IMG/VR virus record: IMGVR_UViG_3300009108_000751 | Coordinates: 124,001 to 188,000 of that record | Reading direction: 5' to 3' (one strand) | DNA: 64,000 bases | Part shown: positions 607 to 63,064 of the stretch, piece after piece | Layout: each line of letters begins with the position of its first letter | Numbering within the stretch: the first letter of the stretch is position 1 | Notes under the pieces: generated by a model | Databases searched by the model: none | What the model was told of the DNA's origin: nothing | The model's input: only the letters and a program-made list of their open reading frames with translations | Program-made: the position numbers and the translations under genes

Positions 607-705
607 CATATCTAATAGTAGGCCCGTCACATTGCATAAGGGTGAACTCGCCACCGTGCCGGAATCATGCGAACAAAATAAAGGAGAAAATTATGCCAAA
701 GGTTA
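607..705 (+). repeat. 99-bp direct repeat, copy 1 (late promoter, structured leader, SD and first codons)
   Basis: Identical to 1150-1248 by direct comparison. Confidence 0.97.
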
Positions 706-1061
706 TTATTTCTGATGATAAAGGTCTGAACCAAACCGCAGGTTCGGGGCTGGAGTCTAGGAGCGCTCACTATAGTAGCTACGGGACTACTACAGCTTTA
801 GCAACAGGTTCTTTCCCGCTTCTTCCTGCGGGAATAGTAAACACTGTTGACAGCACTAACAACGCACATGGTGTTAGATTGCCCAACGCTGCAGGAGCAG
901 GTCAGATCATGATCGTTAGAAATGTAGACAGTGCTCAGGACTGCGTTATTAGAAATCAAGCTGAGACAGGTGCCATCCTTGTCACGCTCGGCGAAGGTAA
1001 GACTGCTCTTTTCGTAAGTACAGCTTCTGGAAATAACTGGTCTGGAAGTCAGCTCGACTAA
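693..1061 (+). CDS. Putative capsid decoration/head-fibre-like protein, paralog A (122 aa)
   Basis: SD aaggag 681-686, ATG 693; directly after the MCP; N-terminus MPKVIISDDKGL matches paralog B; 'LP..AG.GQIMIV...LFV...W' fibre-like domain. Confidence 0.6.
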   Translation: MPKVIISDDKGLNQTAGSGLESRSAHYSSYGTTTALATGSFPLLPAGIVNTVDSTNNAHGVRLPNAAGAGQIMIVRNVDSAQDCVIRNQAETGAILVTLGEGKTALFVSTASGNNWSGSQLD

Positions 1062-7900: not shown

Positions 7901-8091
7901 CTTTGCTTGCAGTAGTTCAGGCACAGAGTGGGATTGAGCAATTCAAAGTTGTAATGGATGACTCTAACAACACCGCTGACGATATTGAGTCTAATAGGCT
8001 GAATGGACGCATTGTGATTGTCCCGACAAGAAGTATTGAGTTTATATCAATTGACTTCGTCATAACAAATGCCGGCGTAAGCTTTGAGTAG
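4960..8091 (+). CDS. Tail sheath protein 1
   Basis: N-terminal 'SPG...E.D', 'G.A.RGPAF.P'; C-terminal 'PWFAPAG..RG', 'INPI', 'GQKTLQ...ALDRVNVRR', 'PTRSIEFI..DF'. Confidence 0.95.
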   Translation: MAEQTFRSPGFFEQEVDLTQRVQSPTGTPAGVVGTAQRGPAFVPVTVGSFVDFQTKFGNLDSKRFGPYAVNEFLKNRDAVTYVRVLGAGANDETEEINTTRVQGSVKNAGFKITPITTDKRLGLSTTHILAAKHHISASEQYGFPIFTHNDSYNSSADANLVRAVIFTTTDSRVGVLSASFDGTDMSAAFCKSGGDALATIGTSGDLKDKFKLFISSSDTSFATTDGQPGMRILTASLDPRNKNYIRNILNTDPAQFSTQKHLLYAAFDVEYCLASISSDANSVGMLSGSAVVSNDNAAGESFLTAFGRYDTRYNTPKTTDFISQPFGTTEYPLFSFETIDDGAFAAGKYKISIANIRGSLDENNPYGTFTVQVRAYSDNDKSKEVLEEYPQCDLNPNSEKFIGRMIGDKKAFFNFDAELESERKVTVSGKYPNMSNVVRVVLSDDVVNGNVPAEALPFGFKGIPALKTNDKLDDFTSQAEVGYRLGGRIGNAATALLQASILPPVPYTFKSTNGAVKDGSVFFVGQQGTQETVDNRIYWGAKTTMLAADKSVQSSGITNSALKSNAGTSVNLGLKDQAKFLGISKMDVLLTGSQIIPAKAGDRKTFNNNKFTLARVALSRQAGLSDTGAYTDTEITGTIGSNMLEAAYIRDAYVDPTTYTVSDGTRLNRITFATLLNQTSSVTFNKFTDYMKFTNVFHGGFDGLNILDKNATRMNDKSISLDTGGGANSSFTSPGMASNMAGAGKDNNAVRSYRAAIDVMTDRFASNINILSIPGVRETFVTDHAIDKVKDFGQALYLMDIPEYDSDGNRLYDDSTNRPSVSKTIANFEARTIDSNTTATYFPGVIITDDSNGSSVNVPPSIAALAALGFNDRVSFPWFAPAGFNRGSLDFVQNVDVRLSAGDRDSLYDARINPIATFPQQGFVIFGQKTLQMAKSALDRVNVRRMLLEVKRIVSQVANGFVFEQNTPALRAKFIADVSPLLAVVQAQSGIEQFKVVMDDSNNTADDIESNRLNGRIVIVPTRSIEFISIDFVITNAGVSFE

Positions 8092-8127: not shown

Positions 8128-11100
8128 ATGGCCGAACGTACTTTTAAAAGCCCAGGCGTAAGAGCTTTTGAGATCGATAGGTCTGGGCCTACCCCAACCG
8201 GTCCAACGGGCGTTCCAGCAGGCGTAATAGGCACTGCTAAAGAAGGCCCAGCTTTCGTACCGATCACAGTTGCCGACTTCTCCGAATTTGAATCTAAGTT
8301 TGGATTTGTAGGCGGCGATGAGTTCGGACCTATCGCTGCACAAGAATGGCTCAGAAATGCTGGGTCCCTTTCTTATGTGCGAGTACTTGGAGCCGGCAAC
8401 GCGAAGAAAAGGTCTTCAAGCGATGGAACGGTTACGAACGCAGGATTTATCGTAGGCCAGAGATTACCTTTGGATTCTGGGCTTTTAGGAGACAATCCAG
8501 AAGCAAACACCGGCGGAGAAGGAGAAGGAAGAACTTACTTCCTCGGATGCTACATGTCGCAATCCGCAGGATCAACAATCTTCTCCGATGCCGGAATAGG
8601 ATCTGCTCAAAATCTTGGTACCACAGTCGCAGCTTCAGTCCTTCGTGGTGTGCTAATGGCAGCATCAGGTGTCAACCTAAGGCTTTCATGCTCAAATGGT
8701 ACGATGGGCCAGGGAAACACACCAACATCAACAATGACATCATCAATGTCAGGCCAGGGCAACCCATCCGCTGGTTTCTTAACGGGTACAATTAACTTTT
8801 CTAACGGGTCCCCTAAGTTTACCATGCTTTTGCCTGGCCACAAAGGAAAAGATTATCCTCGAGTTCTTACAGCATCTTTAAATCCTGATGACAAAGATTA
8901 CTTTGCAAACATCTTCAATAAAGATCCCCAACAAGTTCAGAAGCACGGCTACGTTCTTTACTCGCATTATGATGTATATCCAGAATATGCCGTCGTGACA
9001 GGTTCGGGAATCTTGGCAACAGGATCAAGCGTTGTGAACGGCGCAGTGTCAGGCTTATACTCAGGAAGCTCTGATGCTGTTTTCCTCCTTACAGGAACTC
9101 AAGGGAGAAACAACGGATCTGCCGCGGCGCCAAACTTCGAAGGATTCCGTGAGAGATTCCAGGCCGCTAAGACGCCATTCATTATCTCACAAGAATTTGG
9201 TGGAACCGCCAAGGATCTCTTCCGAGTGCATCTCTTAAGCGATGGTGTCATGAAGGGCAAATCTTCAGACTCAGTGGGTGCGAACACTAAATACAAGGTT
9301 TCTATTGAGAACGTAGGTAAATCTTCAGATGAACTTAACAAGTTCGGTACGTTCGATCTTGTCTTAAGAGACTTTTACGACAACGATGAGAATACATTCG
9401 TTTATGAGGCCTTCCGCGGCCTTAACCTTGATCCTGCATCGACCAATTACATCGGACGTCGAATTGGCGATACCGACATGTTCTACGATTTTGATCAGGC
9501 ACAGGGATCCCAAAAGCTTGTGATTGACGGAAAGTATGCTAACGTTTCTTCGCGCATAAGAGTTGAAATAGCATCTGATGTTGACAACGGTGAAATCGAT
9601 CCTGAATCTCTGCCCCTAGGGTTTAGAGGTCTAGATCACCTTGTAACCTCTGGATCAAATGTTCTTAGCGCACCTCCAAACGCAAACTTCAGCCTACAGA
9701 GAGACCCAAGCATGACGCTCAAATCAGTTGTGCAACCTCCTGTACCGCTTAGAGAGAACATCGCGATGGGTCTCGCGCCTAAGAAGGTGCCTAATAAGTC
9801 GCTTTACTGGGGCGTCCAATTCACGAAGAAAACCCTCTTAAATGAGCCCAACAAGAGCAGCGTTATTGATCCAAGCATAGTCAGCTTTACGAAATTCTTC
9901 ACTGATCACGCCGTATCTGACTTCAATGTATTGACAGGTTCTAATGCAGGTCAGGCTGATGAAAGCGGCGCAATTCTAGATTGTGATAGGTTTAATAACA
10001 ACAAGTTTACTTTAGAAAACCTGCAGGTCGGTACGGGATCTGATGGTCTTGCATTAACCACGGACGCAGCTCTTGTTAACAGCTGGTCATACGCACGCGA
10101 TGGAAACATCACTACGAATGCTGATGCCAAGACCCGAAGGTTTGAGGTAAACGATACAACAAGCCCGGCGGTTCGAAGGCTCTCTAAGTTTACGATGCCA
10201 TTCCAGGGTGGATTTGATGGATTTAACATCTTTAATAAAAACACCGCCTTGATGAACAACAACGCCGTTAAAGGTGAGATGGATGATTCTAACAGAGGTG
10301 GAATCAACGGCCCGACAGTTGCAGCCTTTAAGAAGGCTCTGGAAGTCATGGGTGAGAAGGCTGATGTTGAGATACAGCTCTTGGCTGTTCCTGGCATTAG
10401 AGAGGCTACCGTCACAAATGATGCTATAACGACTGTAGAGGACAGATTTGATGCACTCTACATCATGGATATCGGCGAGCGTGATAACGTAAACGCAGTG
10501 GTTACTTCCTCTGTGCAAAATGTCAATGTTTCAAATACCGTAGCATCATTCAACGACAGAGCCTTGGATTCATCCTTTGCTGCAGCATATTTCCCAGATG
10601 TTAATATGAACATCCAGGTGAAGACACTGAATCAATCAACGAAGACTGTAGTAGCAAATTCTGCAACAGTTCGGGTTCCGCCGTCAGTTGCAGTTTTAGG
10701 TGCTTTCTCGTTCAACGATGCAGTGGCGTTCCCGTGGTTCGCTCCTGCTGGATTTGCCCGAGGATCTATGAACGCTCTATCTACTGCAGTAAGCCTAAAT
10801 CAAACCAATATGGACGATTTGTACGATAAGGATATCAACCCTATCGTTTCGTTCCCTAATAGTTCTGGCCCGGTAGTTTACGGACAGAAAACTCTGCAAT
10901 CTGCAGCGTCTGCTCTTGACAGAGTCAACGTAAGAAGGCTCTTGATCGACGTAAGGCGCTCAGTTAAGCAAGTTGCACAGCAACTTATCTTCGAGCCTAA
11001 TAGAGAATCAACCCTTCAAAGATTCACTGCTTTGGTAACTCCAATCTTGAAGAGAGTTCAGGAAAACCAAGGTGTTGATCGATTTAGAGTTGTTATTGAT

Positions 11101-11232
11101 TCTAGCACAACTACGCAGGCAGACATTGAAAACAATACAGTTCGAGGGAAGATCTTCTTGCAGCCTACACGAACAGCAGAATTCATCTCGCTTGATTTCG
11201 TGGTAACAAATTCAGGAGTTGATGGACTTTAA
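8128..11232 (+). CDS. Tail sheath protein 2
   Basis: Same sheath motifs (SPGV, PWFAPAG, GQKTLQ, DRVNVRRLL, PTRTAEFI). Confidence 0.95.
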   Translation: MAERTFKSPGVRAFEIDRSGPTPTGPTGVPAGVIGTAKEGPAFVPITVADFSEFESKFGFVGGDEFGPIAAQEWLRNAGSLSYVRVLGAGNAKKRSSSDGTVTNAGFIVGQRLPLDSGLLGDNPEANTGGEGEGRTYFLGCYMSQSAGSTIFSDAGIGSAQNLGTTVAASVLRGVLMAASGVNLRLSCSNGTMGQGNTPTSTMTSSMSGQGNPSAGFLTGTINFSNGSPKFTMLLPGHKGKDYPRVLTASLNPDDKDYFANIFNKDPQQVQKHGYVLYSHYDVYPEYAVVTGSGILATGSSVVNGAVSGLYSGSSDAVFLLTGTQGRNNGSAAAPNFEGFRERFQAAKTPFIISQEFGGTAKDLFRVHLLSDGVMKGKSSDSVGANTKYKVSIENVGKSSDELNKFGTFDLVLRDFYDNDENTFVYEAFRGLNLDPASTNYIGRRIGDTDMFYDFDQAQGSQKLVIDGKYANVSSRIRVEIASDVDNGEIDPESLPLGFRGLDHLVTSGSNVLSAPPNANFSLQRDPSMTLKSVVQPPVPLRENIAMGLAPKKVPNKSLYWGVQFTKKTLLNEPNKSSVIDPSIVSFTKFFTDHAVSDFNVLTGSNAGQADESGAILDCDRFNNNKFTLENLQVGTGSDGLALTTDAALVNSWSYARDGNITTNADAKTRRFEVNDTTSPAVRRLSKFTMPFQGGFDGFNIFNKNTALMNNNAVKGEMDDSNRGGINGPTVAAFKKALEVMGEKADVEIQLLAVPGIREATVTNDAITTVEDRFDALYIMDIGERDNVNAVVTSSVQNVNVSNTVASFNDRALDSSFAAAYFPDVNMNIQVKTLNQSTKTVVANSATVRVPPSVAVLGAFSFNDAVAFPWFAPAGFARGSMNALSTAVSLNQTNMDDLYDKDINPIVSFPNSSGPVVYGQKTLQSAASALDRVNVRRLLIDVRRSVKQVAQQLIFEPNRESTLQRFTALVTPILKRVQENQGVDRFRVVIDSSTTTQADIENNTVRGKIFLQPTRTAEFISLDFVVTNSGVDGL

Positions 11233-37822: not shown

Positions 37823-38779
37823 ATGAAAACGCTACCACAGTTGTTCCAGATCCAGGACCAGTTCTCAGAACTATTCCAAAAGAAGGATGACCTTTCCTTG
37901 GAGGAGAGGGAGCGGCTAACACAGGAGTTCTCTCTAGCACTCCACAGTGAGGTGTCAGCCCTGATCAGTGAGATCAACTTTAAGAACCATCATCAGGATC
38001 GTAAGCAGGTGGTGGAGAACAGCATCCTTTTCGAGGGCGTTGATGTCTTCCGATATCTCTTAGCTATCTTAAATCTCTGGGGCTTCAGTGCAGAGGATTT
38101 CTCGCAGGCTTTCGACGACAAGGAGAACTACCTCCAGGTCAAGTATGTCAAGAACGCGCAGAAGTGGCAAGGCCAACCGGTCATCCTCGTGGATGCCGAC
38201 GATGTGATTGTGGAGTTCCGGAAGGGCTACAGTGAGTATCTTAATGCTATGGAAGGCATCGATGTTGACGTCAACTCCAAAGAATATTATTTCACCAACG
38301 GCATTCCAAAGGACCGCTACAATCCTGAGCAACTATTCCAGGATTTCATCGATCAGCGACGCCTCAGAGATTTAGAGCCTATCACGCCCACAATTCAAGC
38401 AATCAACGACTTGTACGACCAGGGCTATTGGATCCAGATTCTTACAGCTAGACCTGACTGGAACAAAACATGCCAGTATGACACTTATACTTGGCTTGAA
38501 AATAGCGGCCTAAAATTCCACAAAATTGACTTTTCGCCTGAGAAGATGATTTGGGCTGCAAATAGTGAGTATTACGATTCTGAGTCGATTGTGTGCGCTA
38601 TTGATGATAGTTCCAAGCACACTATGGAATATGCTAAGCATGGGATCAAAGTGGCATCGCCAGTCACGCCTTATAACGAGGAGTTGCGAGGGGTAGAGAA
38701 CGTCATTATGTTCGAGACAAAGCAAGAACTTGCTGATATCATTAAACAGTTCTCACTCCGGCGCATATTTAGCGTATGA
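37823..38779 (+). CDS. Fusion of an all-alpha NTP-PPase (MazG-like) and a HAD 5'(3')-deoxyribonucleotidase
   Basis: N-terminal 'SEVSAL....NFK.H', 'FEGVDVFRY'; C-terminal 'LVDADDVI', 'ILTARP', 'T..WL', 'AIDDS'. Confidence 0.75.
   Translation: MKTLPQLFQIQDQFSELFQKKDDLSLEERERLTQEFSLALHSEVSALISEINFKNHHQDRKQVVENSILFEGVDVFRYLLAILNLWGFSAEDFSQAFDDKENYLQVKYVKNAQKWQGQPVILVDADDVIVEFRKGYSEYLNAMEGIDVDVNSKEYYFTNGIPKDRYNPEQLFQDFIDQRRLRDLEPITPTIQAINDLYDQGYWIQILTARPDWNKTCQYDTYTWLENSGLKFHKIDFSPEKMIWAANSEYYDSESIVCAIDDSSKHTMEYAKHGIKVASPVTPYNEELRGVENVIMFETKQELADIIKQFSLRRIFSV
38764..38773 (+). promoter_or_regulatory. Putative late promoter (catatttagc)
   Basis: ATATTTA immediately before the start of 38776. Confidence 0.55.
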
Positions 38780-39447
38780 TGCGTATTACAGTTGGACAAT
38801 TACGAACCCTTATAAAGGAAGCAATGCAGGAGCTGAATCCTGATCTTGACCCAGATTGCAAGAGCTTTGCAGTATTTGATTTCGATGAGACGCTGGCACT
38901 GACGGATTCGAAAATTTTGATAACAGATGACCAGGGAAAAAAGATCCGATCTCTTACCCCCGCGCAGTATGCTCTTTATGTTCCCGAGCCGGGAGAGAAC
39001 TTTGACTTTAGTGAATTTGAAATTGTCAAAGACGGTAAACCAACTGCTTTGATGGATGTTCTGCGAGATGTGGCTGCCTGCGGAACCACCGCCGCGGCCA
39101 TTTTAACAGCTCGAGGCCCTAAATCACAAGACCCTATTAGAGAGTTTCTTGCAGACATGGGGGTAAAATTGCAGATAATCGACACTGTAAACACCTCAGA
39201 TCCCCAAGCCAAAGCCCGGAAGATAAAAGGCTACGTTAGATCTTATAGCCCACAAGTCTTGCACTTTTTTGAGGATTCACCTAAGAATCTCGCTGCAGTA
39301 AAGAAGATGGCAGAGTCTGATCGTGAATTTGAGAACGTAGATGTGATTTTGCATAAGATGGTGGATGGCAACAAGGTAGACGTCGAGCACGTCGTGTATA
39401 AAGGATTAAGCGCAATCGCAGCTCCTGAAGATTCAAAACACATTTGA
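38776..39447 (+). CDS. HAD-family phosphatase with N-terminal 'LRTLIKE' tag
   Basis: 'VFDFDETL', 'ILTARG', 'K', 'FFEDSPKN'. Confidence 0.8.
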   Translation: MMRITVGQLRTLIKEAMQELNPDLDPDCKSFAVFDFDETLALTDSKILITDDQGKKIRSLTPAQYALYVPEPGENFDFSEFEIVKDGKPTALMDVLRDVAACGTTAAAILTARGPKSQDPIREFLADMGVKLQIIDTVNTSDPQAKARKIKGYVRSYSPQVLHFFEDSPKNLAAVKKMAESDREFENVDVILHKMVDGNKVDVEHVVYKGLSAIAAPEDSKHI

Positions 39448-48988: not shown

Positions 48989-51900
48989 GTGTCATTTGAC
49001 GATTTCAAGAAACCTAATCGATTCGTAGGCATGCACGGCCACGATGGTTATTCCACTTACGATGGCCTAGGATACCCAGCAGATCACCTGGACTTTGTCT
49101 TGGAGAACGGCATGGATGCCCTCTCTATTACCAACCACGGTAACTGCAACTCCCTCCCTTTCCTCTGGAAGCACGGCGAGAAACTACGCAAGCAAGGTCG
49201 AAATGTTAGAACCATCTCAGGATGTGAGTTCTATTTTGTTCCATCGCTTAAGGAGTGGGAGAAGCAGTATCAAAACCATCGAGATCGAGTAAAGGCGGAA
49301 CGGGATGCTAAAAAGCAAGAAGCCCTATCTAAGATCGATGTCAATAAAGATGCCGAGGATGATGAGGCTCAGGGGGGCCACGTTATTGAGGATGAGGAAG
49401 CCAGCAAGACTTACGACCCCGACGCCTTGGATTGGAAGCGCCGGTATCACTTAGTTGTCACAGCGCGGAACTTGACCGGCCTGCAAAACCTCTTCAGGTT
49501 AATCAAGCGCTCGTACAAGGAAGGGTTTTATCGGTTTCCACGCATTGACTTTGAAATGTTGAAGGAGCACGGGGAAGGGCTCCAGGTGTCGTCTGCCTGT
49601 CTGGCAGGCATCGCCACTGGAACCGTCTTTAAGGGGCAGGCTCACAAGAAAGATTTTGAGGAGATCATGCGGGATCTCGGTAATCTCACAGATCGCTTTC
49701 ATGATGCGCTAAGTCCGGATCGTTTCTTCTGGGAGATCCAGTTCAACTCCTTGGACGCACAACACACCACAAATCACTACCTGCTAGAGATGGCCAAACG
49801 CCACAACCTTCCTCTCATCGCCACCGCAGACAGTCACTATCCACGACCGGACCTGTGGGAAGCCCGGGAGCTCTACAAGAAGCTCGGCTGGATGCGTGAT
49901 AAGCCCACCCCTCTCCCCACCTTCGACGAGCTCAAGTGTGAGCTTTATCCCAAGAACGCGGAACAGATGTGGGAGGAGTACGGAAGGCATTACACTCAGC
50001 ACGACTTCTACAATGGCACCGAAGACATGGTCCGGCAAGCAATCGAGCGTACACATGACCTGACCTGGAACGAGTTCGAGGACGTCTGGATCGACAGCAA
50101 AGCCAAGCTGCCTAACTACGCCAATCCCCAGCGTTCACACGCGTGCTATCCCGAGCCGCCTGAGGACACCCCGTTCCAGCAGCTAGCTAAGCTGGTCAAG
50201 GCGGCGATGATCCGCGAGGGCCTAGGTGACAAGCCCGAGTACGTCGCGCGTGTCAAGGAGGAGATGGACGACATCAAGTTCCTGGGCTTCGAGAACTACT
50301 TCCTGACCATGTATGACGTGTTCCATCTCGCAGAGAAGAAGACGCTGTTCGGGCCGGCCCGTGGTTCGGGTGGTGGCTCGCTGGTCAACTACCTGCTGGG
50401 CATCACGCAGATCGACCCCCTCCCGTTTGGCCTGCTGTGGTCGCGCTTCCTGGGCCGCCACCGCACGTCCTGGCCTGACATCGACTCTGACGCGGGAGAC
50501 CGCGACGCGCTGATCGATGCAGCTCGAGTCCTCTTTGGAGAGGATGCGGTCATTCCCGTGTCCAACTTCAACACGCTGAAACTCAAGTCCATCGTTAAGG
50601 ATGTGGCCAAGTTCTACCAGATCGACTTCGCCGAAGTGAACCGGATCACTGGTCCCCTCCAGGGTGAGGTGGAACCCTTCGCCCGAGATGCCAACACCGA
50701 GAAGTCCGTCTTTGTGCTCAAGCACGACGACTGTATGAAGTACTCCGATAACTACCGGACCTTTATGGAGAAGTATCCGCACGTGGAGAAGCACGTGAGC
50801 ACGTTGTTTATGGAACAACGAGCCATCGGCCGACATGCTGGGGGCGTCCTCATCGCTGATGAGAATGAGTTAGCCGAGACCATGCCCCTGATCGGTGTGC
50901 GTGGTGAGCTCCAGACCCCCTGGACCGAGGGTATGAACTTCCGGAACCTGGAAGACAACGGTTTCATCAAGTTCGACTTCCTCGGCCTAACCCTAATGAA
51001 GGATGTGGAGAACTGCATCAAGCGCGTCCTGCGGACGCCTGACAATCCTCAGCCTAGCTTTGCGCAGATTAAAGAGTATTTTGACGAGCATCTTAACTGC
51101 CGATATGTCAAGCAGGATGACCCTAAGGTGTGGGAGCACTCCTATCACCATCAGAATTTCGCCCCGGGCCTCTTTCAGTTTACGGCTCAGGGAGCTCGCA
51201 ACTTCTGTCAGCAGGCTAAACCCGATAACATTGAGGAACTAGCGGCCATTACTGCTATCTATCGCCCGGGCCCACTCAAGGCTAATGTCCACATCAAGTA
51301 CGTGGAAGCCAAGAACGACCGGGACAACATTGTCTACGACCACCCCGTGATCGAGCGCGTCCTCGGCCCCACCTGCGGTTTCATCACCTTTCAGGAGCAG
51401 TTCATGACCCTGGCAGTCGAGCTCGCAGGGTTTACTCCCGGTGAGTCTGACAAGATGCGTAAGACGCTGGTGAAGAAGTCCTTAGACACCATCGGTAAGA
51501 AGGGTTCCGAACGTGACCAGCTGCGTAAGCAATTCGTGGAAGGTGCTCAACGCCTCCATGACCTAGATCCCAAGATCACTCACGCGCTTTTCGATAAGAT
51601 CGAGTTCTTCTCCCTTTATGGTTTCAATAAGTCGCACGCCGTGGCTTACGCCATCGATAGCTACTACGCCGCCTGGCTCTACACCTACCATCCCAAGGAG
51701 TGGATCGCTACTGTGCTCCAGTCAGAGAACAACTCCCCTAACGGTCTGGCTAAGACCATCCGGGAGGTCAAGGTCCTGGGTTACAAGTTTGCACCATCGG
51801 ATATCAACTACTCCGGTGAGGAGTGGGATTATAATCCTGAGCGAAAAGCCTTTGTACCTCCCCTGTCTTCTATTAAAGGTGTTGGTGGTAAAGCGATGGA

Positions 51901-52879
51901 GGAGATCATCGAGCATCGTCCTTTCCGCAATCTACGCGAGCTCTTCTTTAATGAGGAGGGTAAGTGGCGTCACTCCAAGGTAAATAAGACCTGCTTCGGT
52001 GCGCTCTGTCAGATTGAGGCTTTCACCTCGCTGCAGGAGTTCCAAGACGGTGACCTTGACAACCATCGCCAGCTCTACCACTTGATCGTTGATAACTACG
52101 AGCAGATCCGAAAGTCGGATGAAGGTAAGAAGAAGTGGTTGGATAAGCTAGAAGCCATCGGTGACAAGAACCGCGAGGAGGTCGATAAGATCATCTCCGT
52201 CTACACCAAGACCAAGATGCCTGAGATGGAGGAAGCCGCTCGATCTCTCGTCCTTGATGCTAATGTGATGGACTGGACTTACATCGATCACTTAGTAGAT
52301 TCCCTCAAGACTATCGAGCACCCTAAACCTCGACGACAGCTCCAGATCGATCGCTGCTTCGAACGGATTGCAAAGAACGGCGATCGTCGTGAAAAGATCC
52401 TTGAGCGCATCGATGCTTTCTTCGATCTAGACGAGGCAATGGGTTCTGTTGCGCACATTGAAGACTGGTCGCGTGATGAGAAGATTCGTCTCTACCAGGA
52501 GATCACGTCTGCTATCAATAATGCGTTGGTCTTTCCTGCCGAGGTGATGAAGCGAATCACCAAGACTGATATGCCCTCTGTCTGTGAGATCCCTGGCGGG
52601 GAGAAGGCTGTTGCTTGGGGTTGCGCCGCCGAGATCCAGAAGAAGACCACCAAGAAGGGTAAAGAGTTCTATCGCCTTCGAATGATCGATGACCAGAACA
52701 GATCTTGCTGGCTTCGAGTATGGGGTAAGTTCTTCGAGTGGGGTGAGGAGCGCGGACAAAAGCTCTACTACGAACCACCCGATTTCTCCTACTGGTTGAT
52801 GGAGGTGGATGTAGATCCTAACTGGGGCGCTTCCACCGCAGCCTTTAAGATGCGCAGGATCCCCCTAGCCGATGATTAA
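48989..52879 (+). CDS. dnaE: DNA polymerase III alpha subunit (family C)
   Basis: PHP 'H.H..YS..DG', 'DSHY'; 'GPARGSGGGSLV.YLLGIT', 'PDIDSD', 'HAGG', 'KFDFLGL', 'YRPGP', 'YGFNKSHA'. Confidence 0.96.
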   Translation: MSFDDFKKPNRFVGMHGHDGYSTYDGLGYPADHLDFVLENGMDALSITNHGNCNSLPFLWKHGEKLRKQGRNVRTISGCEFYFVPSLKEWEKQYQNHRDRVKAERDAKKQEALSKIDVNKDAEDDEAQGGHVIEDEEASKTYDPDALDWKRRYHLVVTARNLTGLQNLFRLIKRSYKEGFYRFPRIDFEMLKEHGEGLQVSSACLAGIATGTVFKGQAHKKDFEEIMRDLGNLTDRFHDALSPDRFFWEIQFNSLDAQHTTNHYLLEMAKRHNLPLIATADSHYPRPDLWEARELYKKLGWMRDKPTPLPTFDELKCELYPKNAEQMWEEYGRHYTQHDFYNGTEDMVRQAIERTHDLTWNEFEDVWIDSKAKLPNYANPQRSHACYPEPPEDTPFQQLAKLVKAAMIREGLGDKPEYVARVKEEMDDIKFLGFENYFLTMYDVFHLAEKKTLFGPARGSGGGSLVNYLLGITQIDPLPFGLLWSRFLGRHRTSWPDIDSDAGDRDALIDAARVLFGEDAVIPVSNFNTLKLKSIVKDVAKFYQIDFAEVNRITGPLQGEVEPFARDANTEKSVFVLKHDDCMKYSDNYRTFMEKYPHVEKHVSTLFMEQRAIGRHAGGVLIADENELAETMPLIGVRGELQTPWTEGMNFRNLEDNGFIKFDFLGLTLMKDVENCIKRVLRTPDNPQPSFAQIKEYFDEHLNCRYVKQDDPKVWEHSYHHQNFAPGLFQFTAQGARNFCQQAKPDNIEELAAITAIYRPGPLKANVHIKYVEAKNDRDNIVYDHPVIERVLGPTCGFITFQEQFMTLAVELAGFTPGESDKMRKTLVKKSLDTIGKKGSERDQLRKQFVEGAQRLHDLDPKITHALFDKIEFFSLYGFNKSHAVAYAIDSYYAAWLYTYHPKEWIATVLQSENNSPNGLAKTIREVKVLGYKFAPSDINYSGEEWDYNPERKAFVPPLSSIKGVGGKAMEEIIEHRPFRNLRELFFNEEGKWRHSKVNKTCFGALCQIEAFTSLQEFQDGDLDNHRQLYHLIVDNYEQIRKSDEGKKKWLDKLEAIGDKNREEVDKIISVYTKTKMPEMEEAARSLVLDANVMDWTYIDHLVDSLKTIEHPKPRRQLQIDRCFERIAKNGDRREKILERIDAFFDLDEAMGSVAHIEDWSRDEKIRLYQEITSAINNALVFPAEVMKRITKTDMPSVCEIPGGEKAVAWGCAAEIQKKTTKKGKEFYRLRMIDDQNRSCWLRVWGKFFEWGEERGQKLYYEPPDFSYWLMEVDVDPNWGASTAAFKMRRIPLADD

Positions 52880-54445: not shown

Positions 54446-55375
54446 ATGACAAGACATGCGCTGGTGACGGGAGCCGCTGGGTTTATAGGATCTAATCTTT
54501 GCCGCAAGCTTTTGCAAGAAGGCTGGAAGGTTACAGGAGTAGACGATCTGAGCAGCGGCCATCTTGAGCTTGTCCAGGGATTAAAAGGGCTGACATTGGT
54601 CGTAAATGACTTCGCTTCTGAACCCATTGTAGAAGCTGTGGAGTCAGGAGACTTTGACGTAGTATTTCACGTCGCCGCAGTGCCACGCGTAAGCTATTCA
54701 GTCGAAAATCCATCAGATACAACTCTTAATAACGTGGCTAAGACAGTAAAGTTAATGGAGTCTTGCAGGGGAAAGATCGATAGGTTTGTATTCTCTTCGT
54801 CTTCGTCAGTCTACGGGGGCGCCGAAGTAATGCCCACACCTATAGATCAGCCTCGAGATCCAAAGTCTCCTTATGCTTGGCAGAAGTCTTCTGTAGAAGA
54901 TCTGCTTAGAATGTTTGGTAATCTATACGATTTCGACTCCGTGTGCCTGCGCTACTTTAATGTGTTTGGACCTAATCAATACGGTGACTCACCCTACTCC
55001 ACAGCCATCTCCGCATGGTGTCACGCTGTAAAAGAAGGATTACCTCTTCGAAAAGACGGCACAGGTGAACAGAGTCGTGATATGTGCTATGTTGACAATG
55101 TTGTAGATGTTAATATACGAGCAGCCAACCACGAAGGTGCACTTAAAGGTGAGGCTTTCAACGTCGCATGCGGTGATCGAACTAGCAACAATGAGATCTT
55201 GGCTGCTTTCGAGTCCCGATTTGGAGATATCGACGTAAAGCAGGCTCCATTTCGACCCGGAGATGTCATGCACACTCAGGCAGATATTTCCGAGACAGAA
55301 AGAGTATTTGGTTACAAGCCCCTTGTAAGATTTTGGGACGGTCTTGAAAAGACGTTTGACTGGTGGGGAATATAG
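54446..55375 (+). CDS. NDP-sugar epimerase/dehydratase (WbpP/GalE-like SDR)
   Basis: 'TGAAGFIG', 'VDDLSSG', 'SSSSVYG', 'PYAWQK', 'LRYFNVFGP', 'RPGDV'. Confidence 0.92.
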   Translation: MTRHALVTGAAGFIGSNLCRKLLQEGWKVTGVDDLSSGHLELVQGLKGLTLVVNDFASEPIVEAVESGDFDVVFHVAAVPRVSYSVENPSDTTLNNVAKTVKLMESCRGKIDRFVFSSSSSVYGGAEVMPTPIDQPRDPKSPYAWQKSSVEDLLRMFGNLYDFDSVCLRYFNVFGPNQYGDSPYSTAISAWCHAVKEGLPLRKDGTGEQSRDMCYVDNVVDVNIRAANHEGALKGEAFNVACGDRTSNNEILAAFESRFGDIDVKQAPFRPGDVMHTQADISETERVFGYKPLVRFWDGLEKTFDWWGI

Positions 55376-55386
55376 CAGTAGACCAT

Positions 55387-55396
55387 CATATTTATT
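55387..55396 (+). promoter_or_regulatory. Putative late promoter (catatttatt)
   Basis: ATATTTA upstream of 55423. Confidence 0.65.
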
Positions 55397-55410
55397 CCTG
55401 ATAGTGCACC

Positions 55411-55462
55411 CGGAGTGTTTTTATGAATCTCACTGAAAATGATTTACGCCTTCTGGTTCGCA
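55411..55462 (+). repeat. 52-bp RBS plus N-terminal tag module, copy 1
   Basis: 49/52 nt identical to 56098-56149. Confidence 0.9.
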
Positions 55463-56049
55463 GTATTCTACGGGAAGAATCAGCAAAACCTGGCCCGTCC
55501 AGCGTGAACAAAGCAGATTTTTATCAGAAGCTCCCTGTGGAGAAGCAAGATGATCTGCAAAAAGCTGTCGATAAGTTTGCTAAAGCACAAGTCCCCACGC
55601 TTGTCAATGTCGCAAAAAACATGTCAGGAAAGTCAGGTAAAAAAAGCTCAGAAGTACTCGCATCTTTTCTAAAAAATCCTACGCTTAAAATTCCTCCAAT
55701 GAAGCTAGGAAGAAATTTAAAACTAGGTGGTGAGTTTGGAGCTGGTAATAATTCAAAAGTAAAAGCTGTCGTTGAAAAGGGAAAGCTCAAAGGGTTTACG
55801 TTCTCAGGCGAGCTTGGCCCAGGCTTGGAAATTAAAAATGTTTTCGTACAGACCCCTACGATCTCTCTCAGCAAAGAAGCGACAGCCGAGCTAGACATGG
55901 GTCTAACGCAGGACATGGCTAGCGCAAAAGCAGGCCTAAACTATAAGATTCCAGGCGGATCTATAACAGGTGCAGCAGCAGGAAATATAGCTCTCGATTC
56001 ATCCAAGTCCGATTATGAATTCTCTATTGGCTTAAGCAAGAAGTTCTAA
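55423..56049 (+). CDS. Late hypothetical protein, N-terminal tag and beta-rich C-terminus
   Basis: 'MNLTENDLRLLVRSILREE'; ends 'EFSIGLSKKF'. Confidence 0.7.
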   Translation: MNLTENDLRLLVRSILREESAKPGPSSVNKADFYQKLPVEKQDDLQKAVDKFAKAQVPTLVNVAKNMSGKSGKKSSEVLASFLKNPTLKIPPMKLGRNLKLGGEFGAGNNSKVKAVVEKGKLKGFTFSGELGPGLEIKNVFVQTPTISLSKEATAELDMGLTQDMASAKAGLNYKIPGGSITGAAAGNIALDSSKSDYEFSIGLSKKF

Positions 56050-56097
56050 AATGAGAAAATCTACAGGAATTTGTTGCATATCTATTAAAATAGATCA

Positions 56098-56149
56098 CGG
56101 AGTGTTTTTATGAAGCTCACTGAAAACGATTTACGCCTTCTGATTCGCA
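56098..56149 (+). repeat. 52-bp RBS plus N-terminal tag module, copy 2
   Basis: See 55411-55462; preceded by the late-type motif catatctatt at 56077. Confidence 0.9.
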
Positions 56150-57516
56150 ACATCCTGCGCGAGCAGGACGAAGAAGAAGTTGAAGAAGAAACCGAAGAAG
56201 AGGCTGAGGCCGAAGAAGCGGTCGTTGAACCCGAAGTCAAAGAACCCGAGGTTGATCCTGAGCTCCAGTCCCTAGCAAAGGAATATGAAGACGCAAGTTC
56301 ATTTAAAGCGAAAGCTGAGGCTATAGCTAATATCTTGCGTCGCCCTGAGTTCTTTGGAACTGATATCGTAGGGCCCACCAAAGGGAAGCAGGTAAAAGGC
56401 AAGAATTCCATGCGGTTCGGAGTAGGTGCAGGTGCAAAAGACAAGCATGATTTTAAAGACATCGCTGATAAGATCTATGCTGTCTTGGCTCCAGAAAAAG
56501 TAAATCCAGTTCGCGTGTTCGGTCCCGATACTGGCCCCAATGAGAGCGGAACTTACACATCTTATGTTCTTCCTGACCTGGACAACCTAATGTTCACGTT
56601 CGGAGGAGCAGGTGAGACATCTGGACAACGCAAAGGTGGCTACGAATATGAGATGAACGTGATCTTCCCGAACCTGAAGGATGCAGGTTTAGAAGCAGAG
56701 CTTGGCGCAGATAATACAATCTCAGATGTTTACGTTGTGACTAAGGATGGCAAGCTTGGTATTGAGGTAAAACTCCCTGACGCACAGCTCGGTGAACCCA
56801 CACTCAAGTATAATATTAAAGATAAATCTTTCTTCCCGTCAGTTGAGAAGGGCATTAACGTAGATGTAGCTAATCTGATCAATGCTGACGACACAAGCAC
56901 AGACGCTTATAACCGAATGGTGATTATTCGTGATAAGGTCAACACACAAAGATCAGCTGACGGAGAAGATTCTGAGCTTTCACCCTTCCAGGACATTATC
57001 GATAAGATCACTAGAGCCGAGTATGACCAGATTGTTAAGCCTGCCCTGCGCGCAGACACAGAAGCAGGAAGTGATATCAGCGGAGTGAAGATCGGTGAGT
57101 TTAAGATCGGTTCTGACCGCATGAGGGACTACTACCTTGGAAAGAAAGCAGGCCTAGTTCAAGTGAAGGGTAAGGGACTCTATCATTTGCATCCGGATTT
57201 TGAGATCAAGATTAAAGACGAGGATGGCAACGAGAAGAGAACCATCCTCTTCGACTTCAGTGATCAAGTCTCAGGCGGAGTCCAGTTTCGAAACATGAAG
57301 GGCAACCGATATGGCATCAGATCAGACACAAGAAGTGCTCCTCTTAAAAAGATCCGACAGTCCCCCATCGATCTTGACAGCGAAGCTGACAGAGAGGCAT
57401 TCGCAGCAGTTGTGCCTGACATGACCTTTCCAGATCCAAAATCTTTGATGGATGACAAATCCCTAGCAGAGTCAGTTCAAAACCGCTGGCAACTTTTGGC
57501 CGGCATAAAAGAATAA
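56110..57516 (+). CDS. Late protein with a putative PD-(D/E)XK nuclease domain, tagged at both termini
   Basis: 'MKLTENDLRLLIRNILRE', acidic tract, 'G.EYE', 'SDVYV.......IEVK', C-terminal 'ES..NRWQLLAGIKE'. Confidence 0.6.
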   Translation: MKLTENDLRLLIRNILREQDEEEVEEETEEEAEAEEAVVEPEVKEPEVDPELQSLAKEYEDASSFKAKAEAIANILRRPEFFGTDIVGPTKGKQVKGKNSMRFGVGAGAKDKHDFKDIADKIYAVLAPEKVNPVRVFGPDTGPNESGTYTSYVLPDLDNLMFTFGGAGETSGQRKGGYEYEMNVIFPNLKDAGLEAELGADNTISDVYVVTKDGKLGIEVKLPDAQLGEPTLKYNIKDKSFFPSVEKGINVDVANLINADDTSTDAYNRMVIIRDKVNTQRSADGEDSELSPFQDIIDKITRAEYDQIVKPALRADTEAGSDISGVKIGEFKIGSDRMRDYYLGKKAGLVQVKGKGLYHLHPDFEIKIKDEDGNEKRTILFDFSDQVSGGVQFRNMKGNRYGIRSDTRSAPLKKIRQSPIDLDSEADREAFAAVVPDMTFPDPKSLMDDKSLAESVQNRWQLLAGIKE

Positions 57517-62437: not shown

Positions 62438-63064
62438 ATGAACGACAAAGATCTAAGAAAATTGATTGCAGAGGAATTTGCTGCAATAATATCAGAACAA
62501 GAAACTCAAGAAGTGCCTACAGGTGATGAACCTGATGTGCCTGCCCCAGATTCAGTAGATGTCCAGATTGATGAGCTTTTGCTGCAATATGAAAAGCTTT
62601 CTCTTCCTGACGAAGAAGAGGTTCTTGAAGAAGTTTTGACTACTACTTCTCTTCGGTTTATTTTAGAACAAGAAGAAGTTGATGTTGAAGTCGACGTCGA
62701 AGAAGAGGGCGAAGAAGAAGGCGACGATGAGGGTGGAGAAGAAGCTGAAGCTGAAGAGGAAGATGAAGAAGTAGAGGTTGAGGAAAAAATGCCTAAGCTT
62801 GACGTCATTACTTTTGCAACTAAAGTGGCACGCCTCGCAGAGATCCCTGAGAAGGTTTTAGATCTAAAAGACGCGATCATCAATCGCGCTATACATTATC
62901 TTCAGACAAATTACGATGAGAATGTCGCAAAAGAATTTGAGACTGCTCTAATGGACAAGTTTCAGCTGGCCGTGCCGGAAGAAGAAGTTGAAAAGCTTGT
63001 TGCTTCTGATTTACCCGCACCTCCAGCAGTTGGAGCAGGCCCAGGAGGCGGCGCCGGAGGCTGA
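62438..63064 (+). CDS. Acidic late protein, possibly head-internal or scaffold-like
   Basis: 'DLRKLIAEE', 'SVD.QID..L..YE', long Glu tract. Confidence 0.65.
   Translation: MNDKDLRKLIAEEFAAIISEQETQEVPTGDEPDVPAPDSVDVQIDELLLQYEKLSLPDEEEVLEEVLTTTSLRFILEQEEVDVEVDVEEEGEEEGDDEGGEEAEAEEEDEEVEVEEKMPKLDVITFATKVARLAEIPEKVLDLKDAIINRAIHYLQTNYDENVAKEFETALMDKFQLAVPEEEVEKLVASDLPAPPAVGAGPGGGAGG

What the first reader, a model, noticed from the sequence alone, without database searches (positions are those of the whole stretch)
55411..56149. DNA-level copy of the RBS plus tag module onto two unrelated genes
55411-55462 and 56098-56149 are 49/52 identical (cggagtgtttttATGAA.CTCACTGAAAA.GATTTACGCCTTCTG.TTCGCA). 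Protein similarity ends a few codons later at 'ILRE' and the bodies are unrelated. This is direct evidence that the tag moves as a cassette and may recruit new cargo by recombination.
Basis: seen in the sequence. Interest (0 to 1): 0.65.

Follow-up and report, generated by a model that had tools for sequence, protein, structure and literature searches.

The report
Phage cargo genes share leader cassette
Two neighbouring genes of an uncultured marine T4-like jumbo phage begin with the same promoter, ribosome-binding site and 18-residue tag but encode unrelated proteins, as the internal-protein genes of phage T4 do, and related phages show gene bodies being swapped in and out by recombination at this shared leader.

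Summary
55411-55462 and 56098-56149 are 49/52 identical, and 88% identical over 65 nt; no shuffle matched. Only these two DNA copies exist in 235 kb of this phage.

The repeats are the ribosome-binding site plus the first 18 codons of gene A (208 aa) and gene B (468 aa). BLASTP and a profile comparison align only residues 1-22.

The host is a T4-like jumbo phage with gp20 portal, gp21-family S77 protease and gp23 capsid protein. At least 14 otherwise unrelated proteins in it start with the same degenerate tag, mostly ending [LIM]-x-E, the gp21 cleavage motif.

In relatives, the slot between the epimerase and IMPDH genes holds B alone, A+B, C+B2, A'+C or C alone, behind the same leader. Between the window and one relative, identity is 88-100% from leader A to codon ~10 of leader B, against 60-82% upstream and 52-88% downstream. 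Synonymous divergence is 0.11 for A and 1.37 for B. So A moved recently by crossovers in or near the leaders.

B and C also end in the scaffold protein's C-terminal motif (NRW.LLAGIK).

My best reading is a T4-style capsid-targeting leader cassette; T4 ipIII/ipII share 47/47 nt in the same way. Packaging and cleavage are inferred, not shown. I rate it a new variant of a known kind.

The parts
55376..55410 (+). Upstream region U1 of gene A, with a late-promoter-like box ATATTTATT at 55388-55396
   Evidence: In the 235-kb contig the motif [AT]TAT[ATC]TAT[TA] has 9 plus-strand hits. Eight of them lie 27-50 nt upstream of an ORF start: portal, tail sheath, tail tube, A, B, two further tagged genes and a 94-aa ORF. 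In relatives that lack A, the same U1 sequence sits directly in front of B or C.
55411..55475 (+). Left copy of the repeat: RBS (GGAG 55412-55415), ATG 55423 and the tag codons of gene A
55423..56049 (+). Gene A: 208 aa, pI 9.6. It has an 18-residue tag ending ILRE, then a body found only in this phage lineage.
   Evidence: ORF list. No Pfam or PHROG family. Only 3 homolog clusters at 74% identity or more. An exhaustive search finds only its own cluster plus weak matches to repeat proteins. dN/dS is 0.2-0.3, so it is a real coding gene. pI. The AlphaFold model is unusable, pLDDT 38.
56050..56097 (+). Spacer S: a diverged second copy of U1, with the promoter-like box ATATCTATT at 56078-56086
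   Evidence: Alignment of U1 and S scores above all 2000 shuffles. The box is listed. The same spacer precedes B in L024 and L042, and precedes C in L029 and L030, whenever A is present.
56098..56162 (+). Right copy of the repeat: RBS (GGAG 56099-56102), ATG 56110 and the tag codons of gene B
   Evidence: The tract of 88-100% identity to relative L024 ends at about 56140, inside this copy.
56110..57516 (+). Gene B: 468 aa, pI 4.7. Layout: tag (residues 1-18), disordered acidic linker (19 to ~48; 56164-56253), folded body (~50-446), C-terminal tail ESVQNRWQLLAGIKE (57466-57513).
   Evidence: Model with mean pLDDT 79; helix 5-20, low confidence at 17-47 and 450-468. Residues 175-439 resemble PD-(D/E)xK nucleases (Hjc Z 7.9, HhaI Z 7.4 over 176 aa) and residues 53-167 resemble an NTase fold (Z 6-6.7). 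These scores are middling. D206, E219 and K221 are invariant in 21 homologs. The tail matches the C-terminus of the scaffold-like protein.
38776..39447 (+). Another tagged gene in the window: M-MRITVGQLRTLIKEAMQE..., a polynucleotide-kinase/HAD-like protein
   Evidence: phrog_415, E 3.8e-7.
62438..63064 (+). Another tagged gene in the window: MNDKDLRKLIAEEFAAIISE..., acidic, 208 aa

Best explanation
The window comes from an uncultured marine T4-like jumbo phage. Genes A and B are two members of a set of at least 14 accessory genes. Their products start with a short amphipathic helix, consensus M-K-[LI]-T-x-x-x-L-R-x-[LI]-I-[RK]-x-x-L-x-E.

I read this helix as the functional analogue of the T4 capsid targeting sequence. 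It would dock the protein into the scaffold core of the prohead. The gp21-family prohead protease would then cut it off after the [LI]-x-E at its end. The cargo would stay in the head and be injected with the DNA. B and the alternative cargo C carry a second address as well: a copy of the scaffold protein's C-terminal motif.

At the DNA level, each cargo gene at this locus is preceded by the same promoter + RBS + tag leader. Because the leader is repeated, homologous recombination within it inserts, deletes or replaces the cargo body between leaders. A is such an inserted cassette: A body plus spacer, flanked by the two leader copies. It was exchanged recently between phage lineages.

Shown here: the repeat, the unrelated bodies, the tag family, the locus polymorphism, and the recombinant tract bounded by the leaders. 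Inferred: capsid targeting, proteolytic removal, injection, and the function of the cargo.
For: Phage identity. The window lies in an IMG/VR contig; a 235-kb contig of the same phage is estimated 70% complete. The head module has Portal_T4, Peptidase_S77 (gp21) and Gp23.

The tag family.
- An HMM of the tags finds 10 places in 235 kb, nearly all at ORF starts.
- 13 of 30 core-motif hits lie in the first 15 residues, against 1.6 expected; 9 of these are clear tags.
- Further tags were found by eye, including a tandem array of 5-6 tagged genes.
- All-against-all BLASTP finds similarity only in the tags, except for two weak pairs.
- The Glu at tag position 18 was invariant in the first alignment of six proteins. 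Most tags end [LIM]-x-E. gp21 cuts after L/I-x-E (PMC9026906).
- The predicted maturation site of the capsid protein, LLRE|Q or LLE|N, lies near the position that aligns with the mature start of T4 gp23.
- One tagged protein is encoded inside the head module, here and in the cultured Flavobacterium phage immuto.
- A, B and two other tagged genes carry the promoter-like box also found before the portal, sheath and tube genes.

The C-terminal tail.
- The acidic scaffold-like protein next to the capsid gene ends ...NRWALLAGIK. B ends ...NRWQLLAGIKE and C ends ...NRWQLLAGVKAK.
- Immuto's scaffold homolog ends ...SRWQKLAGIIK.

Termini are uncoupled from bodies.
- B homologs with 27-35% body identity keep 83-94% tag identity and 69-85% tail identity.
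- Homologs with 42-45% body identity have 22-44% tag identity and different tails or none.

Recombination.
- Eight locus architectures were found in relatives.
- A is 95.7% nt identical to L024, while the flanking genes are 76-87% identical.
- The identity profile steps up at 55421 and down at about 56140.
- dS is 0.11 for A and 1.37 for B.

Precedent. T4 ipIII and ipII are adjacent and share RBS + CTS at 47/47 nt before their bodies diverge. T-even internal proteins are diverse and share only the CTS (PMC3012670; PMC9026906).
Against: - No proteomic or experimental datum shows that any tagged protein is in the virion or is cleaved.
- The tag has no sequence similarity to the T4 CTS (MKTYQEFIAE) and is nearly twice as long.
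- The C-type tag ends ILRV, without the terminal Glu.
- In longer B-family homologs the tag-like stretch is internal (P0018). In P0014, P0021 and P0017 a tag-like helix sits at the C-terminus. So it may be a position-independent binding helix rather than a cleaved N-terminal propeptide.
- [LI]-x-E is common in this acidic proteome (25 sites in the scaffold), so the motif alone is weak evidence.
- The complex prediction of the capsid protein with B's tail gave no answer.
- Codons 12-18 of the two leaders are saturated at synonymous sites. The A/B leader duplication itself is therefore old, and only the 5' 45 nt look recently homogenised.
- Contigs from four sequencing runs showed no A-less junction.
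- Several cargoes are enzymes of 200-640 aa, larger than classical T4 internal proteins.
Confidence: 0.6

Rival explanations
1. The tag is a generic amphipathic helix with a role unrelated to the capsid, such as oligomerisation, membrane or host-factor binding, or a degradation or regulation signal. It is shared by many accessory proteins. The leader still acts as a recombination substrate.
For: Tag-like helices occur internally and at C-termini in some B homologs. The C-type tag lacks the terminal Glu. Cargoes include ordinary-looking enzymes: PNK/HAD-like, 5'-nucleotidase + CPDase, and nuclease-like. There is no virion proteomics.
Against: This reading does not explain four things: why B and C copy the scaffold protein's C-terminus; why a tagged protein sits in the head module in two distant phages; why tagged genes carry the promoter-like box of the portal, sheath and tube genes; and why tags track the phage lineage rather than the cargo family.
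Confidence: 0.22
2. The DNA-level identity of the two leaders is kept by a constraint on the nucleotide sequence itself. Candidates are a translational operator (RegA-like) or an RNA structure around the start codon. Common descent and recombination would then not be needed.
For: The RBS GGAGTGTTT(T/C) is conserved even before the C-type leader, whose codons have diverged at synonymous sites. The best-conserved part is the RBS plus codons 1-11.
Against: The folds of the two leaders differ and are not unusually stable (z -1.05 and -1.64), and there is no Rfam match. Twelve other tagged genes use quite different RBS and codons; median leader identity is 39%. The C-type leader encodes nearly the same peptide with 59-63% nt identity. 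The step-like identity profile and the 12-fold difference in dS are signatures of recombination, not of constraint.
Confidence: 0.1
3. A and B are full-length paralogs from a tandem duplication, and their bodies have diverged beyond recognition.
For: They are adjacent, on the same strand, with the same leader. BLASTP gives weak sub-threshold alignments in the bodies (E 0.023 and 0.14). A's structure could not be modelled, so a fold comparison is missing.
Against: A's body is less than half as long as B's. The profile comparison aligns only columns 1-22. A lacks B's acidic linker, its invariant D/E-x-K residues and its C-terminal tail. Residues 127-202 of A match repeat units of unrelated beta-repeat proteins. 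Relatives 94% identical in B lack A altogether, and in others A' sits next to C, not B.
Confidence: 0.04

Closest known systems
T4 internal proteins (IPI, IPII, IPIII, Alt) with the capsid targeting sequence, and the hyperplastic IP loci of T-even phages (Mullaney & Black 1996 and Repoila et al. 1994, as cited in PMC9026906 and PMC2839356)
   Same: A short N-terminal leader is shared by otherwise unrelated proteins. The leader ends in the gp21 motif L/I-x-E. The phage has a gp20/gp21/gp22-like/gp23 head module. Adjacent genes share RBS + leader at the DNA level: T4 ipIII/ipII 47/47 nt, against 49/52 nt here. The loci vary between close relatives, and conserved promoter/RBS/leader sequences flank the variable bodies.
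   Different: There is no sequence similarity between the tags, and this one is 18 residues against 10. At least 14 proteins are tagged, against 3-4 in T4. Several are enzyme-sized (up to 639 aa) and enzyme-like. Some carry a second, C-terminal scaffold-like motif, which T4 gp22 does not have. The promoter-like box resembles a late-type element shared with structural genes, whereas the T-even IP elements are described as based on early promoters. Packaging is unproven here.
Propeptide-bearing inner-body and ejection proteins of giant phages phiKZ, 201phi2-1 and SPN3US
   Same: These are jumbo phages with a gp21-related protease that cuts after Glu in a short motif, and with many head-internal proteins that carry N-terminal propeptides.
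   Different: Those propeptides are long and are not one shared short tag. Their motif is S/A/G-x-E (from my own knowledge). No leader-cassette repeat at the DNA level has been described for them, as far as I know.
PeSL mobile regulatory cassettes of T4-type phages (Arbiol et al. 2010, PMC2839356; Comeau et al. 2014, PMC4122927)
   Same: Short conserved regulatory sequences flank variable ORFs and mediate insertion, deletion and replacement by homologous recombination. A mini-circle intermediate would give exactly the direct repeats seen around A.
   Different: PeSLs are an early promoter plus a stem-loop and are non-coding. Here the repeat contains a late-like box, the RBS and 18 codons. No significant stem-loop is present.
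Encapsulin cargo-loading peptides and scaffold C-terminal coat-binding helices (P22, 80alpha)
   Same: A short terminal peptide addresses diverse cargo to the interior of an HK97-fold shell. B and C end in the scaffold's own C-terminal motif. The comparison to these systems rests on my own knowledge.
   Different: There is no sequence relation, and the binding partner here is unknown (the complex prediction gave no answer).

Membership tests
T4-type CTS-bearing internal (injected) head proteins | A short N-terminal leader shared by proteins whose mature parts are unrelated | tested here: met
T4-type CTS-bearing internal (injected) head proteins | The leader ends in the prohead-protease site L/I-x-E | tested here: met
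   A ends ILRE|E and B ends ILRE|Q. Most other tags end [LIM]-x-E at positions 15-22. Exception: the C-type tag ends ILRV. The motif is short and common, so this is weak on its own.
T4-type CTS-bearing internal (injected) head proteins | The phage encodes a gp21-family (S77) prohead protease, a scaffold core and a gp23-type capsid | tested here: met
   PF03420 E 6.4e-25, PF07230 E 1.2e-76, PF07068 E 6.5e-75. An acidic 476-aa scaffold-like protein lies between the protease and capsid genes.
T4-type CTS-bearing internal (injected) head proteins | Sequence homology of the leader to the T4 CTS (MKTYQEFIAE) | tested here: not met
   T4 leaders were read from NC_000866. They share only the general character of an amphipathic helix ending in Glu. 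An HMM of the tags finds nothing meaningful in T4.
T4-type CTS-bearing internal (injected) head proteins | The protein is packaged in the prohead, processed by the protease and injected | not testable with these tools
   This needs virion mass spectrometry, N-terminal mapping and reporter fusions.
T4-type CTS-bearing internal (injected) head proteins | The genes lie in hyperplastic loci, with the promoter/RBS/leader repeated at the DNA level | tested here: met
   Eight locus architectures. The U1/spacer duplication. The recombinant tract bounded by the leaders.
PD-(D/E)xK nuclease superfamily (body of B) | An alpha/beta core with catalytic D...(D/E)-x-K | tested here: inconclusive
   D206, E219 and K221 are invariant in 21 homologs. 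Fold matches to Hjc, HhaI, HinP1I, I-Ssp6803I and SPARDA nucleases score Z 6.3-7.9; Foldseek gives E >= 6e-3. Such Z values are common for chance matches according to the tool's own note.
PeSL regulatory cassettes | An early sigma-70-like promoter followed by a GC-rich stem-loop | tested here: not met
   There is no sigma-70-like site or terminator-like stem-loop between the epimerase gene and B. The leader RNA folds are not unusual.

The most novel reading that the evidence does not exclude
A clade of marine T4-like phages, including this jumbo phage and the cultured Flavobacterium phage immuto, may use a two-address cargo-loading code. The first address is an N-terminal helix that is cleaved off. 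The second is a C-terminal copy of the scaffold protein's own tail. Together they would load a large, exchangeable arsenal of enzymes (nuclease-like, RNA-repair-like) into the capsid for injection. The promoter + RBS + tag leader would double as a recombination landing pad that lets the population shuffle these effectors, in effect a cassette system for injected proteins.
Probability: 0.35. Interest if true: 0.7.

Novelty: new variant of a known kind. Interest (0 to 1): 0.5.

Why it matters
If the tag is a capsid-targeting signal, it gives a simple sequence rule for listing the injected proteins of a large, uncultured group of marine phages. Such proteins are the first phage products to meet host defences. 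The candidates here include a nuclease-like protein and RNA-repair-like enzymes.

The finding also extends T4's CTS principle, which is used as a protein-delivery and vaccine platform, to a different tag and to a possible second, C-terminal address.

The population data give an unusually clean natural example of modular gene exchange whose breakpoints lie in a coding leader.

The claim is testable in a cultured relative, Flavobacterium phage immuto.

Tried and rejected
- A scan of IMG/VR with a degenerate leader pattern found only the same phage. tblastn of the 21-22-aa tags against cultured phages found nothing, because the queries are too short.
- Pfam and PHROGs gave nothing for A, B or C.
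- The AlphaFold model of A (4 sequences) has pLDDT 38.
- The Atlas look-alike search for A gave only viral hypotheticals at 0.90 and attacin/gloverin at 0.85. These are leads only, and I did not use them.
- Complex prediction of the capsid protein with B's C-terminal 44 residues gave no answer: score 0.03 against a mark of 0.34. It is no evidence either way (two earlier tries found the machine busy).
- I laid Logan contigs of four runs on 54900-57000. The A-B arrangement is present in two studies, with no junction that skips A. The extra pieces at 56166-56207 are unrelated GAA-rich repeats. Contigs cannot show rare variants, so this does not exclude polymorphism within a sample.
- An RNA structure or known RNA family in the leader is not supported.
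- I considered concerted evolution of the A and B leaders within one genome. L024's two leaders share Ser14 and Gln17, but there are too few sites to decide.
- Repoila et al. 1994 (PMC395341) is not held in the library. I relied on how later papers describe it.
- No paper on a CTS in marine T4-like phages, on Immutovirus virions or on Mel-JY01 was found.

Full report
**1. The observation**

None of 100 dinucleotide-preserving shuffles produced a match. The repeat finder extends the pair to 65 nt at 88% identity, spaced 687 nt apart. A direct comparison shows that identity collapses upstream of CGGAG and downstream of codon ~18.

Each copy holds GGAG, seven bases, ATG and 18 codons. ORF A (55423-56049, 208 aa) starts MNLTENDLRLLVRSILRE. 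ORF B (56110-57516, 468 aa) starts MKLTENDLRLLIRNILRE.

**2. Where this is**

The window is part of a 78-kb IMG/VR viral contig. The same phage is present, with this locus identical, in a 98-kb contig and in a 235-kb contig estimated 70% complete, so the genome is probably over 300 kb. I fetched the 235-kb contig in tiles and analysed it whole.

Just upstream of the window lies a T4-type head module: Portal_T4, Peptidase_S77 (the gp21 family) and Gp23. An acidic 476-aa scaffold-like protein sits between the protease and capsid genes. The capsid protein aligns with solved T4 gp23. The nearest cultured relatives by capsid protein are Flavobacterium phage immuto (45% identity) and Microcystis phage Mel-JY01. 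All genes around the finding are on the + strand. The minus-strand ORFs that overlap A and B are most likely spurious.

**3. A and B are unrelated beyond the tag**

BLASTP aligns residues 1-20 at 75% identity and nothing else of significance. A profile-profile comparison of the A family with the B family aligns columns 1-22 only.

B has a wide family (24 clusters). Its model (mean pLDDT 79) shows a tag helix (5-20), a disordered acidic linker, a folded body and a detached C-terminal helix. The body resembles an NTase-like domain (residues 53-167) followed by a PD-(D/E)xK nuclease-like domain (residues 175-439). The best matches are Hjc at Z 7.9 and HhaI at Z 7.4 over 176 residues, which are middling scores. 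D206, E219 and K221 are invariant in 21 homologs.

A is basic (pI 9.6). It has only three homolog clusters at 74% identity or more. It is under purifying selection, with dN/dS 0.2-0.3, and has no other copy in the phage. In an exhaustive search its only remote matches are repeat units of a giant cadherin/Big_9/RTX protein and of an 874-aa repeat protein on a bacterial contig.

A's structure model is unusable (pLDDT 38).

**4. The tag is a family**

A degenerate version, M-K-[LI]-T-x-x-x-L-R-x-[LI]-I-[RK]-x-x-L-x-E, heads many proteins of this phage.
- In the window: 38776 (PNK/HAD-like) and 62438.
- In the rest of the contig: a 138-aa protein inside the head module and a 604-aa protein.
- Elsewhere in the 235-kb contig: a 104-aa and a 156-aa protein; a 639-aa protein with HAD 5'-nucleotidase and tRNA-ligase CPD domains; and a tandem array of five or six tagged genes at 225.8-228.6 kb.

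The core motif is strongly N-terminal: 13 of 30 hits lie in the first 15 residues, against 1.6 expected. All-against-all BLASTP finds similarity only in the tags, apart from two weak pairs. Among all leader pairs, A/B is the most alike at the DNA level (79% over 75 nt; median 39%). A second DNA-similar group sits in the tandem array.

**5. What relatives show**

Metagenomic relatives, whose flanking genes are 75-93% nt identical to the window, keep the synteny epimerase - [slot] - IMPDH. The slot varies:
- B alone
- ORF169 + B
- ORF169 + A + B
- A + B (the window)
- ORF169 + B2, a B homolog only 33% identical
- ORF169 + C + B2
- ORF169 + A' + C
- C' directly before IMPDH (the contig starts just upstream of C')

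C is a 439-aa protein. It shares with B only the 17-residue tag and the last ~15 residues.

Where A is absent, the sequence upstream of B or C is the one found upstream of A in the window. Where A is present, B or C is preceded by the 48-nt spacer. That spacer is itself a diverged copy of the upstream region, promoter-like box included. So A body + spacer sits between two copies of a promoter + RBS + tag leader.

Relatives whose B is 94% identical to the window's lack A. A relative whose B is only 75% identical has an A that is 94% identical. The identity profile between the window and that relative is as follows:
- 60-82% in the end of the epimerase gene and the upstream region (55141-55420)
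- 88-100% from 55421 to about 56140
- 52-95% (mostly 72-88%) beyond

Synonymous divergence is 0.11 for A against 1.37 for B. A recently exchanged tract is thus bounded by the two leader copies. This is direct comparative evidence that crossovers fall in or next to the leaders.

The right-hand edge coincides with the end of the near-perfect part of the repeat: the RBS plus codons 1-11 differ at 2 positions, while codons 12-18 are saturated at synonymous sites.

**6. What the tag most likely does**

T4 gp21 cuts after L/I-x-E, and T4 internal proteins carry 10-19-residue N-terminal propeptides that dock them to the prohead core and are then removed (PMC9026906). T-even internal proteins are diverse and share only this capsid targeting sequence (PMC3012670; PMC12373910). 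The following points link the tag here to that system.
- The phage has the gp21 family protease.
- The tags mostly end [LIM]-x-E.
- The capsid protein has LLE|N and LLRE|Q close to the position that aligns with the mature start of T4 gp23.
- A tagged small protein is encoded inside the head module, both here and in phage immuto.
- A box ATAT(T/C)TAT(T/A) lies 27-50 nt upstream of the portal, sheath and tube genes and of A, B and two more tagged genes: 8 of 9 plus-strand occurrences.
- The scaffold-like protein ends ...NRWALLAGIK, B ends ...NRWQLLAGIKE and C ends ...NRWQLLAGVKAK. Immuto's scaffold homolog ends ...SRWQKLAGIIK. T4 gp22 has no such tail.

In the B family the termini follow the phage, not the cargo. 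Homologs with 27-35% body identity keep 83-94% tag identity and 69-85% tail identity. Homologs with 42-45% body identity have unrelated termini.

All this fits addresses that must match a given prohead. None of it is direct proof of packaging or cleavage.

**7. Comparison with the known**

I read the T4 genome record directly. ipIII and ipII are adjacent, and their RBS plus CTS codons are identical at 47 of 47 nt before the bodies diverge. That is the same pattern as in this finding.

Later papers describe conserved promoter/leader elements at the variable T-even IP loci as analogues of PeSL shuffling cassettes (PMC2839356). What differs here:
- an unrelated and longer tag
- many more tagged proteins, some of them enzyme-like
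- a possible second, C-terminal address copied from the scaffold
- a late-like promoter box
- a distant, uncultured marine jumbo phage as host

I found no paper describing such tags in marine T4-like phages.

**8. Rivals**

A nucleotide-level constraint, such as an operator or RNA structure, is not supported. The folds are unremarkable and differ between the two leaders, there is no Rfam hit, other tagged genes use other RBS and codons, and the C-type leader encodes almost the same peptide with 59-63% nt identity.

A capsid-unrelated role for the helix remains possible. Tag-like helices are internal or C-terminal in some homologs, and the C-type tag lacks the final Glu.

The complex prediction gave no answer. 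The laid contigs showed no A-less junction.

**9. Verdict**

The thing is best described as a T4-style leader cassette (promoter + RBS + capsid-targeting-like tag) that organises exchangeable cargo genes.

- That the leaders bound recombinational exchange: about 0.85.
- That the tag is a cleaved capsid-targeting signal: about 0.55.
- Overall confidence in the combined explanation: 0.6.
- Novelty: a new variant of a known kind.
- Interest: about 0.5.

Noticed in passing
window 607-753 and 1150-1296 (ORFs 642-1061 and 1185-1682): A second DNA-level leader copy: 147 nt at 87% identity. Two adjacent ORFs just downstream of the capsid gene both start MNSPPCRNHANKIKEKIMPKV behind an identical upstream sequence, then diverge.
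   Followed up: no
G001 225824-228584 (loci L020 16824-19584): A tandem array of five or six small genes that all start with MKIT(K/A)(R/S)KLRQII(K/R/Q)EEL-type tags. One ORF carries a second, internal tag copy (MRITVGQLREIIREAV) almost identical in peptide to the tag of the PNK-like gene 65 kb away.
   Followed up: partly
window 38776-39447; G001 223585-225504: Two tagged proteins look like RNA/DNA end-repair enzymes: one matches the PNK family phrog_415, the other has HAD 5'-nucleotidase plus tRNA-ligase CPD domains. If packaged, they would be pre-made counter-defence enzymes.
   Followed up: partly
L003 6664-8094 (G000 coordinates, upstream of the window); MW353176 gene immuto35A_203: The acidic protein before the capsid gene is probably the scaffold and ends NRWALLAGIK. 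Its homolog in phage immuto ends SRWQKLAGIIK and is annotated 'DNA polymerase phi-like protein', probably a misannotation. Immuto gene 187 starts MKKQILSEQFRRMQKLAGII, so the same motif can be N-terminal.
   Followed up: partly
window 55388-55396, 56078-56086 and seven more sites in G001: A candidate late promoter, cATAT(T/C)TAT(T/A), lies 27-50 nt upstream of the portal, sheath, tube and several tagged genes. T4's late promoter is TATAAATA (from my own knowledge).
   Followed up: partly
relatives L022, L024, L025, L026 and others, between the epimerase gene and the leader: A 169-aa untagged ORF (phrog_1128-like) is present in most relatives but missing from the window phage and from L034, L039 and L043. 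This is a second presence/absence polymorphism at the same locus.
   Followed up: partly
proteins P0015-P0020, P0014, P0017, P0021: B-family homologs of 532-816 aa are fusions behind another domain, and in most of them the tag-like stretch is internal. P0014, P0021 and P0017 (also a long fusion) end in tag-like helices (...SETLRNLIRKIL) instead of the RWQLLAG tail.
   Followed up: no
window 55801-56028 (A residues 127-202): A's C-terminal part matches repeat units of a 4917-aa cadherin/Big_9/RTX protein (26 stretches) and of an 874-aa repeat protein on a bacterial contig (36% over 77 aa, three times). It may be a captured fragment of a beta-repeat protein.
   Followed up: partly
window 4960-8091 and 8128-11232: Two adjacent paralogous tail-sheath-like genes of ~1040 aa each, with a 77-nt stretch of 71% DNA identity.
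   Followed up: no
window 48989-52879: A DnaE-type DNA polymerase III alpha subunit (PHP, DNA_pol3_alpha; 1296 aa) in a phage with a T4-type head. GC content peaks locally at 0.55.
   Followed up: no
window 56166-56207 and 62666-62797: GAA/GAG-rich acidic-linker coding repeats. In the laid runs they attract short pieces of unrelated contigs, which should not be read as variants.
   Followed up: yes
L046 1413-2051: One relative has an extra tagged gene (…MKIKVASLRKIIREELNRAILQE…) inserted between the 303-aa gene and the lipoprotein-like gene, where the window has none. This suggests that tagged cassettes also land at other loci.
   Followed up: no
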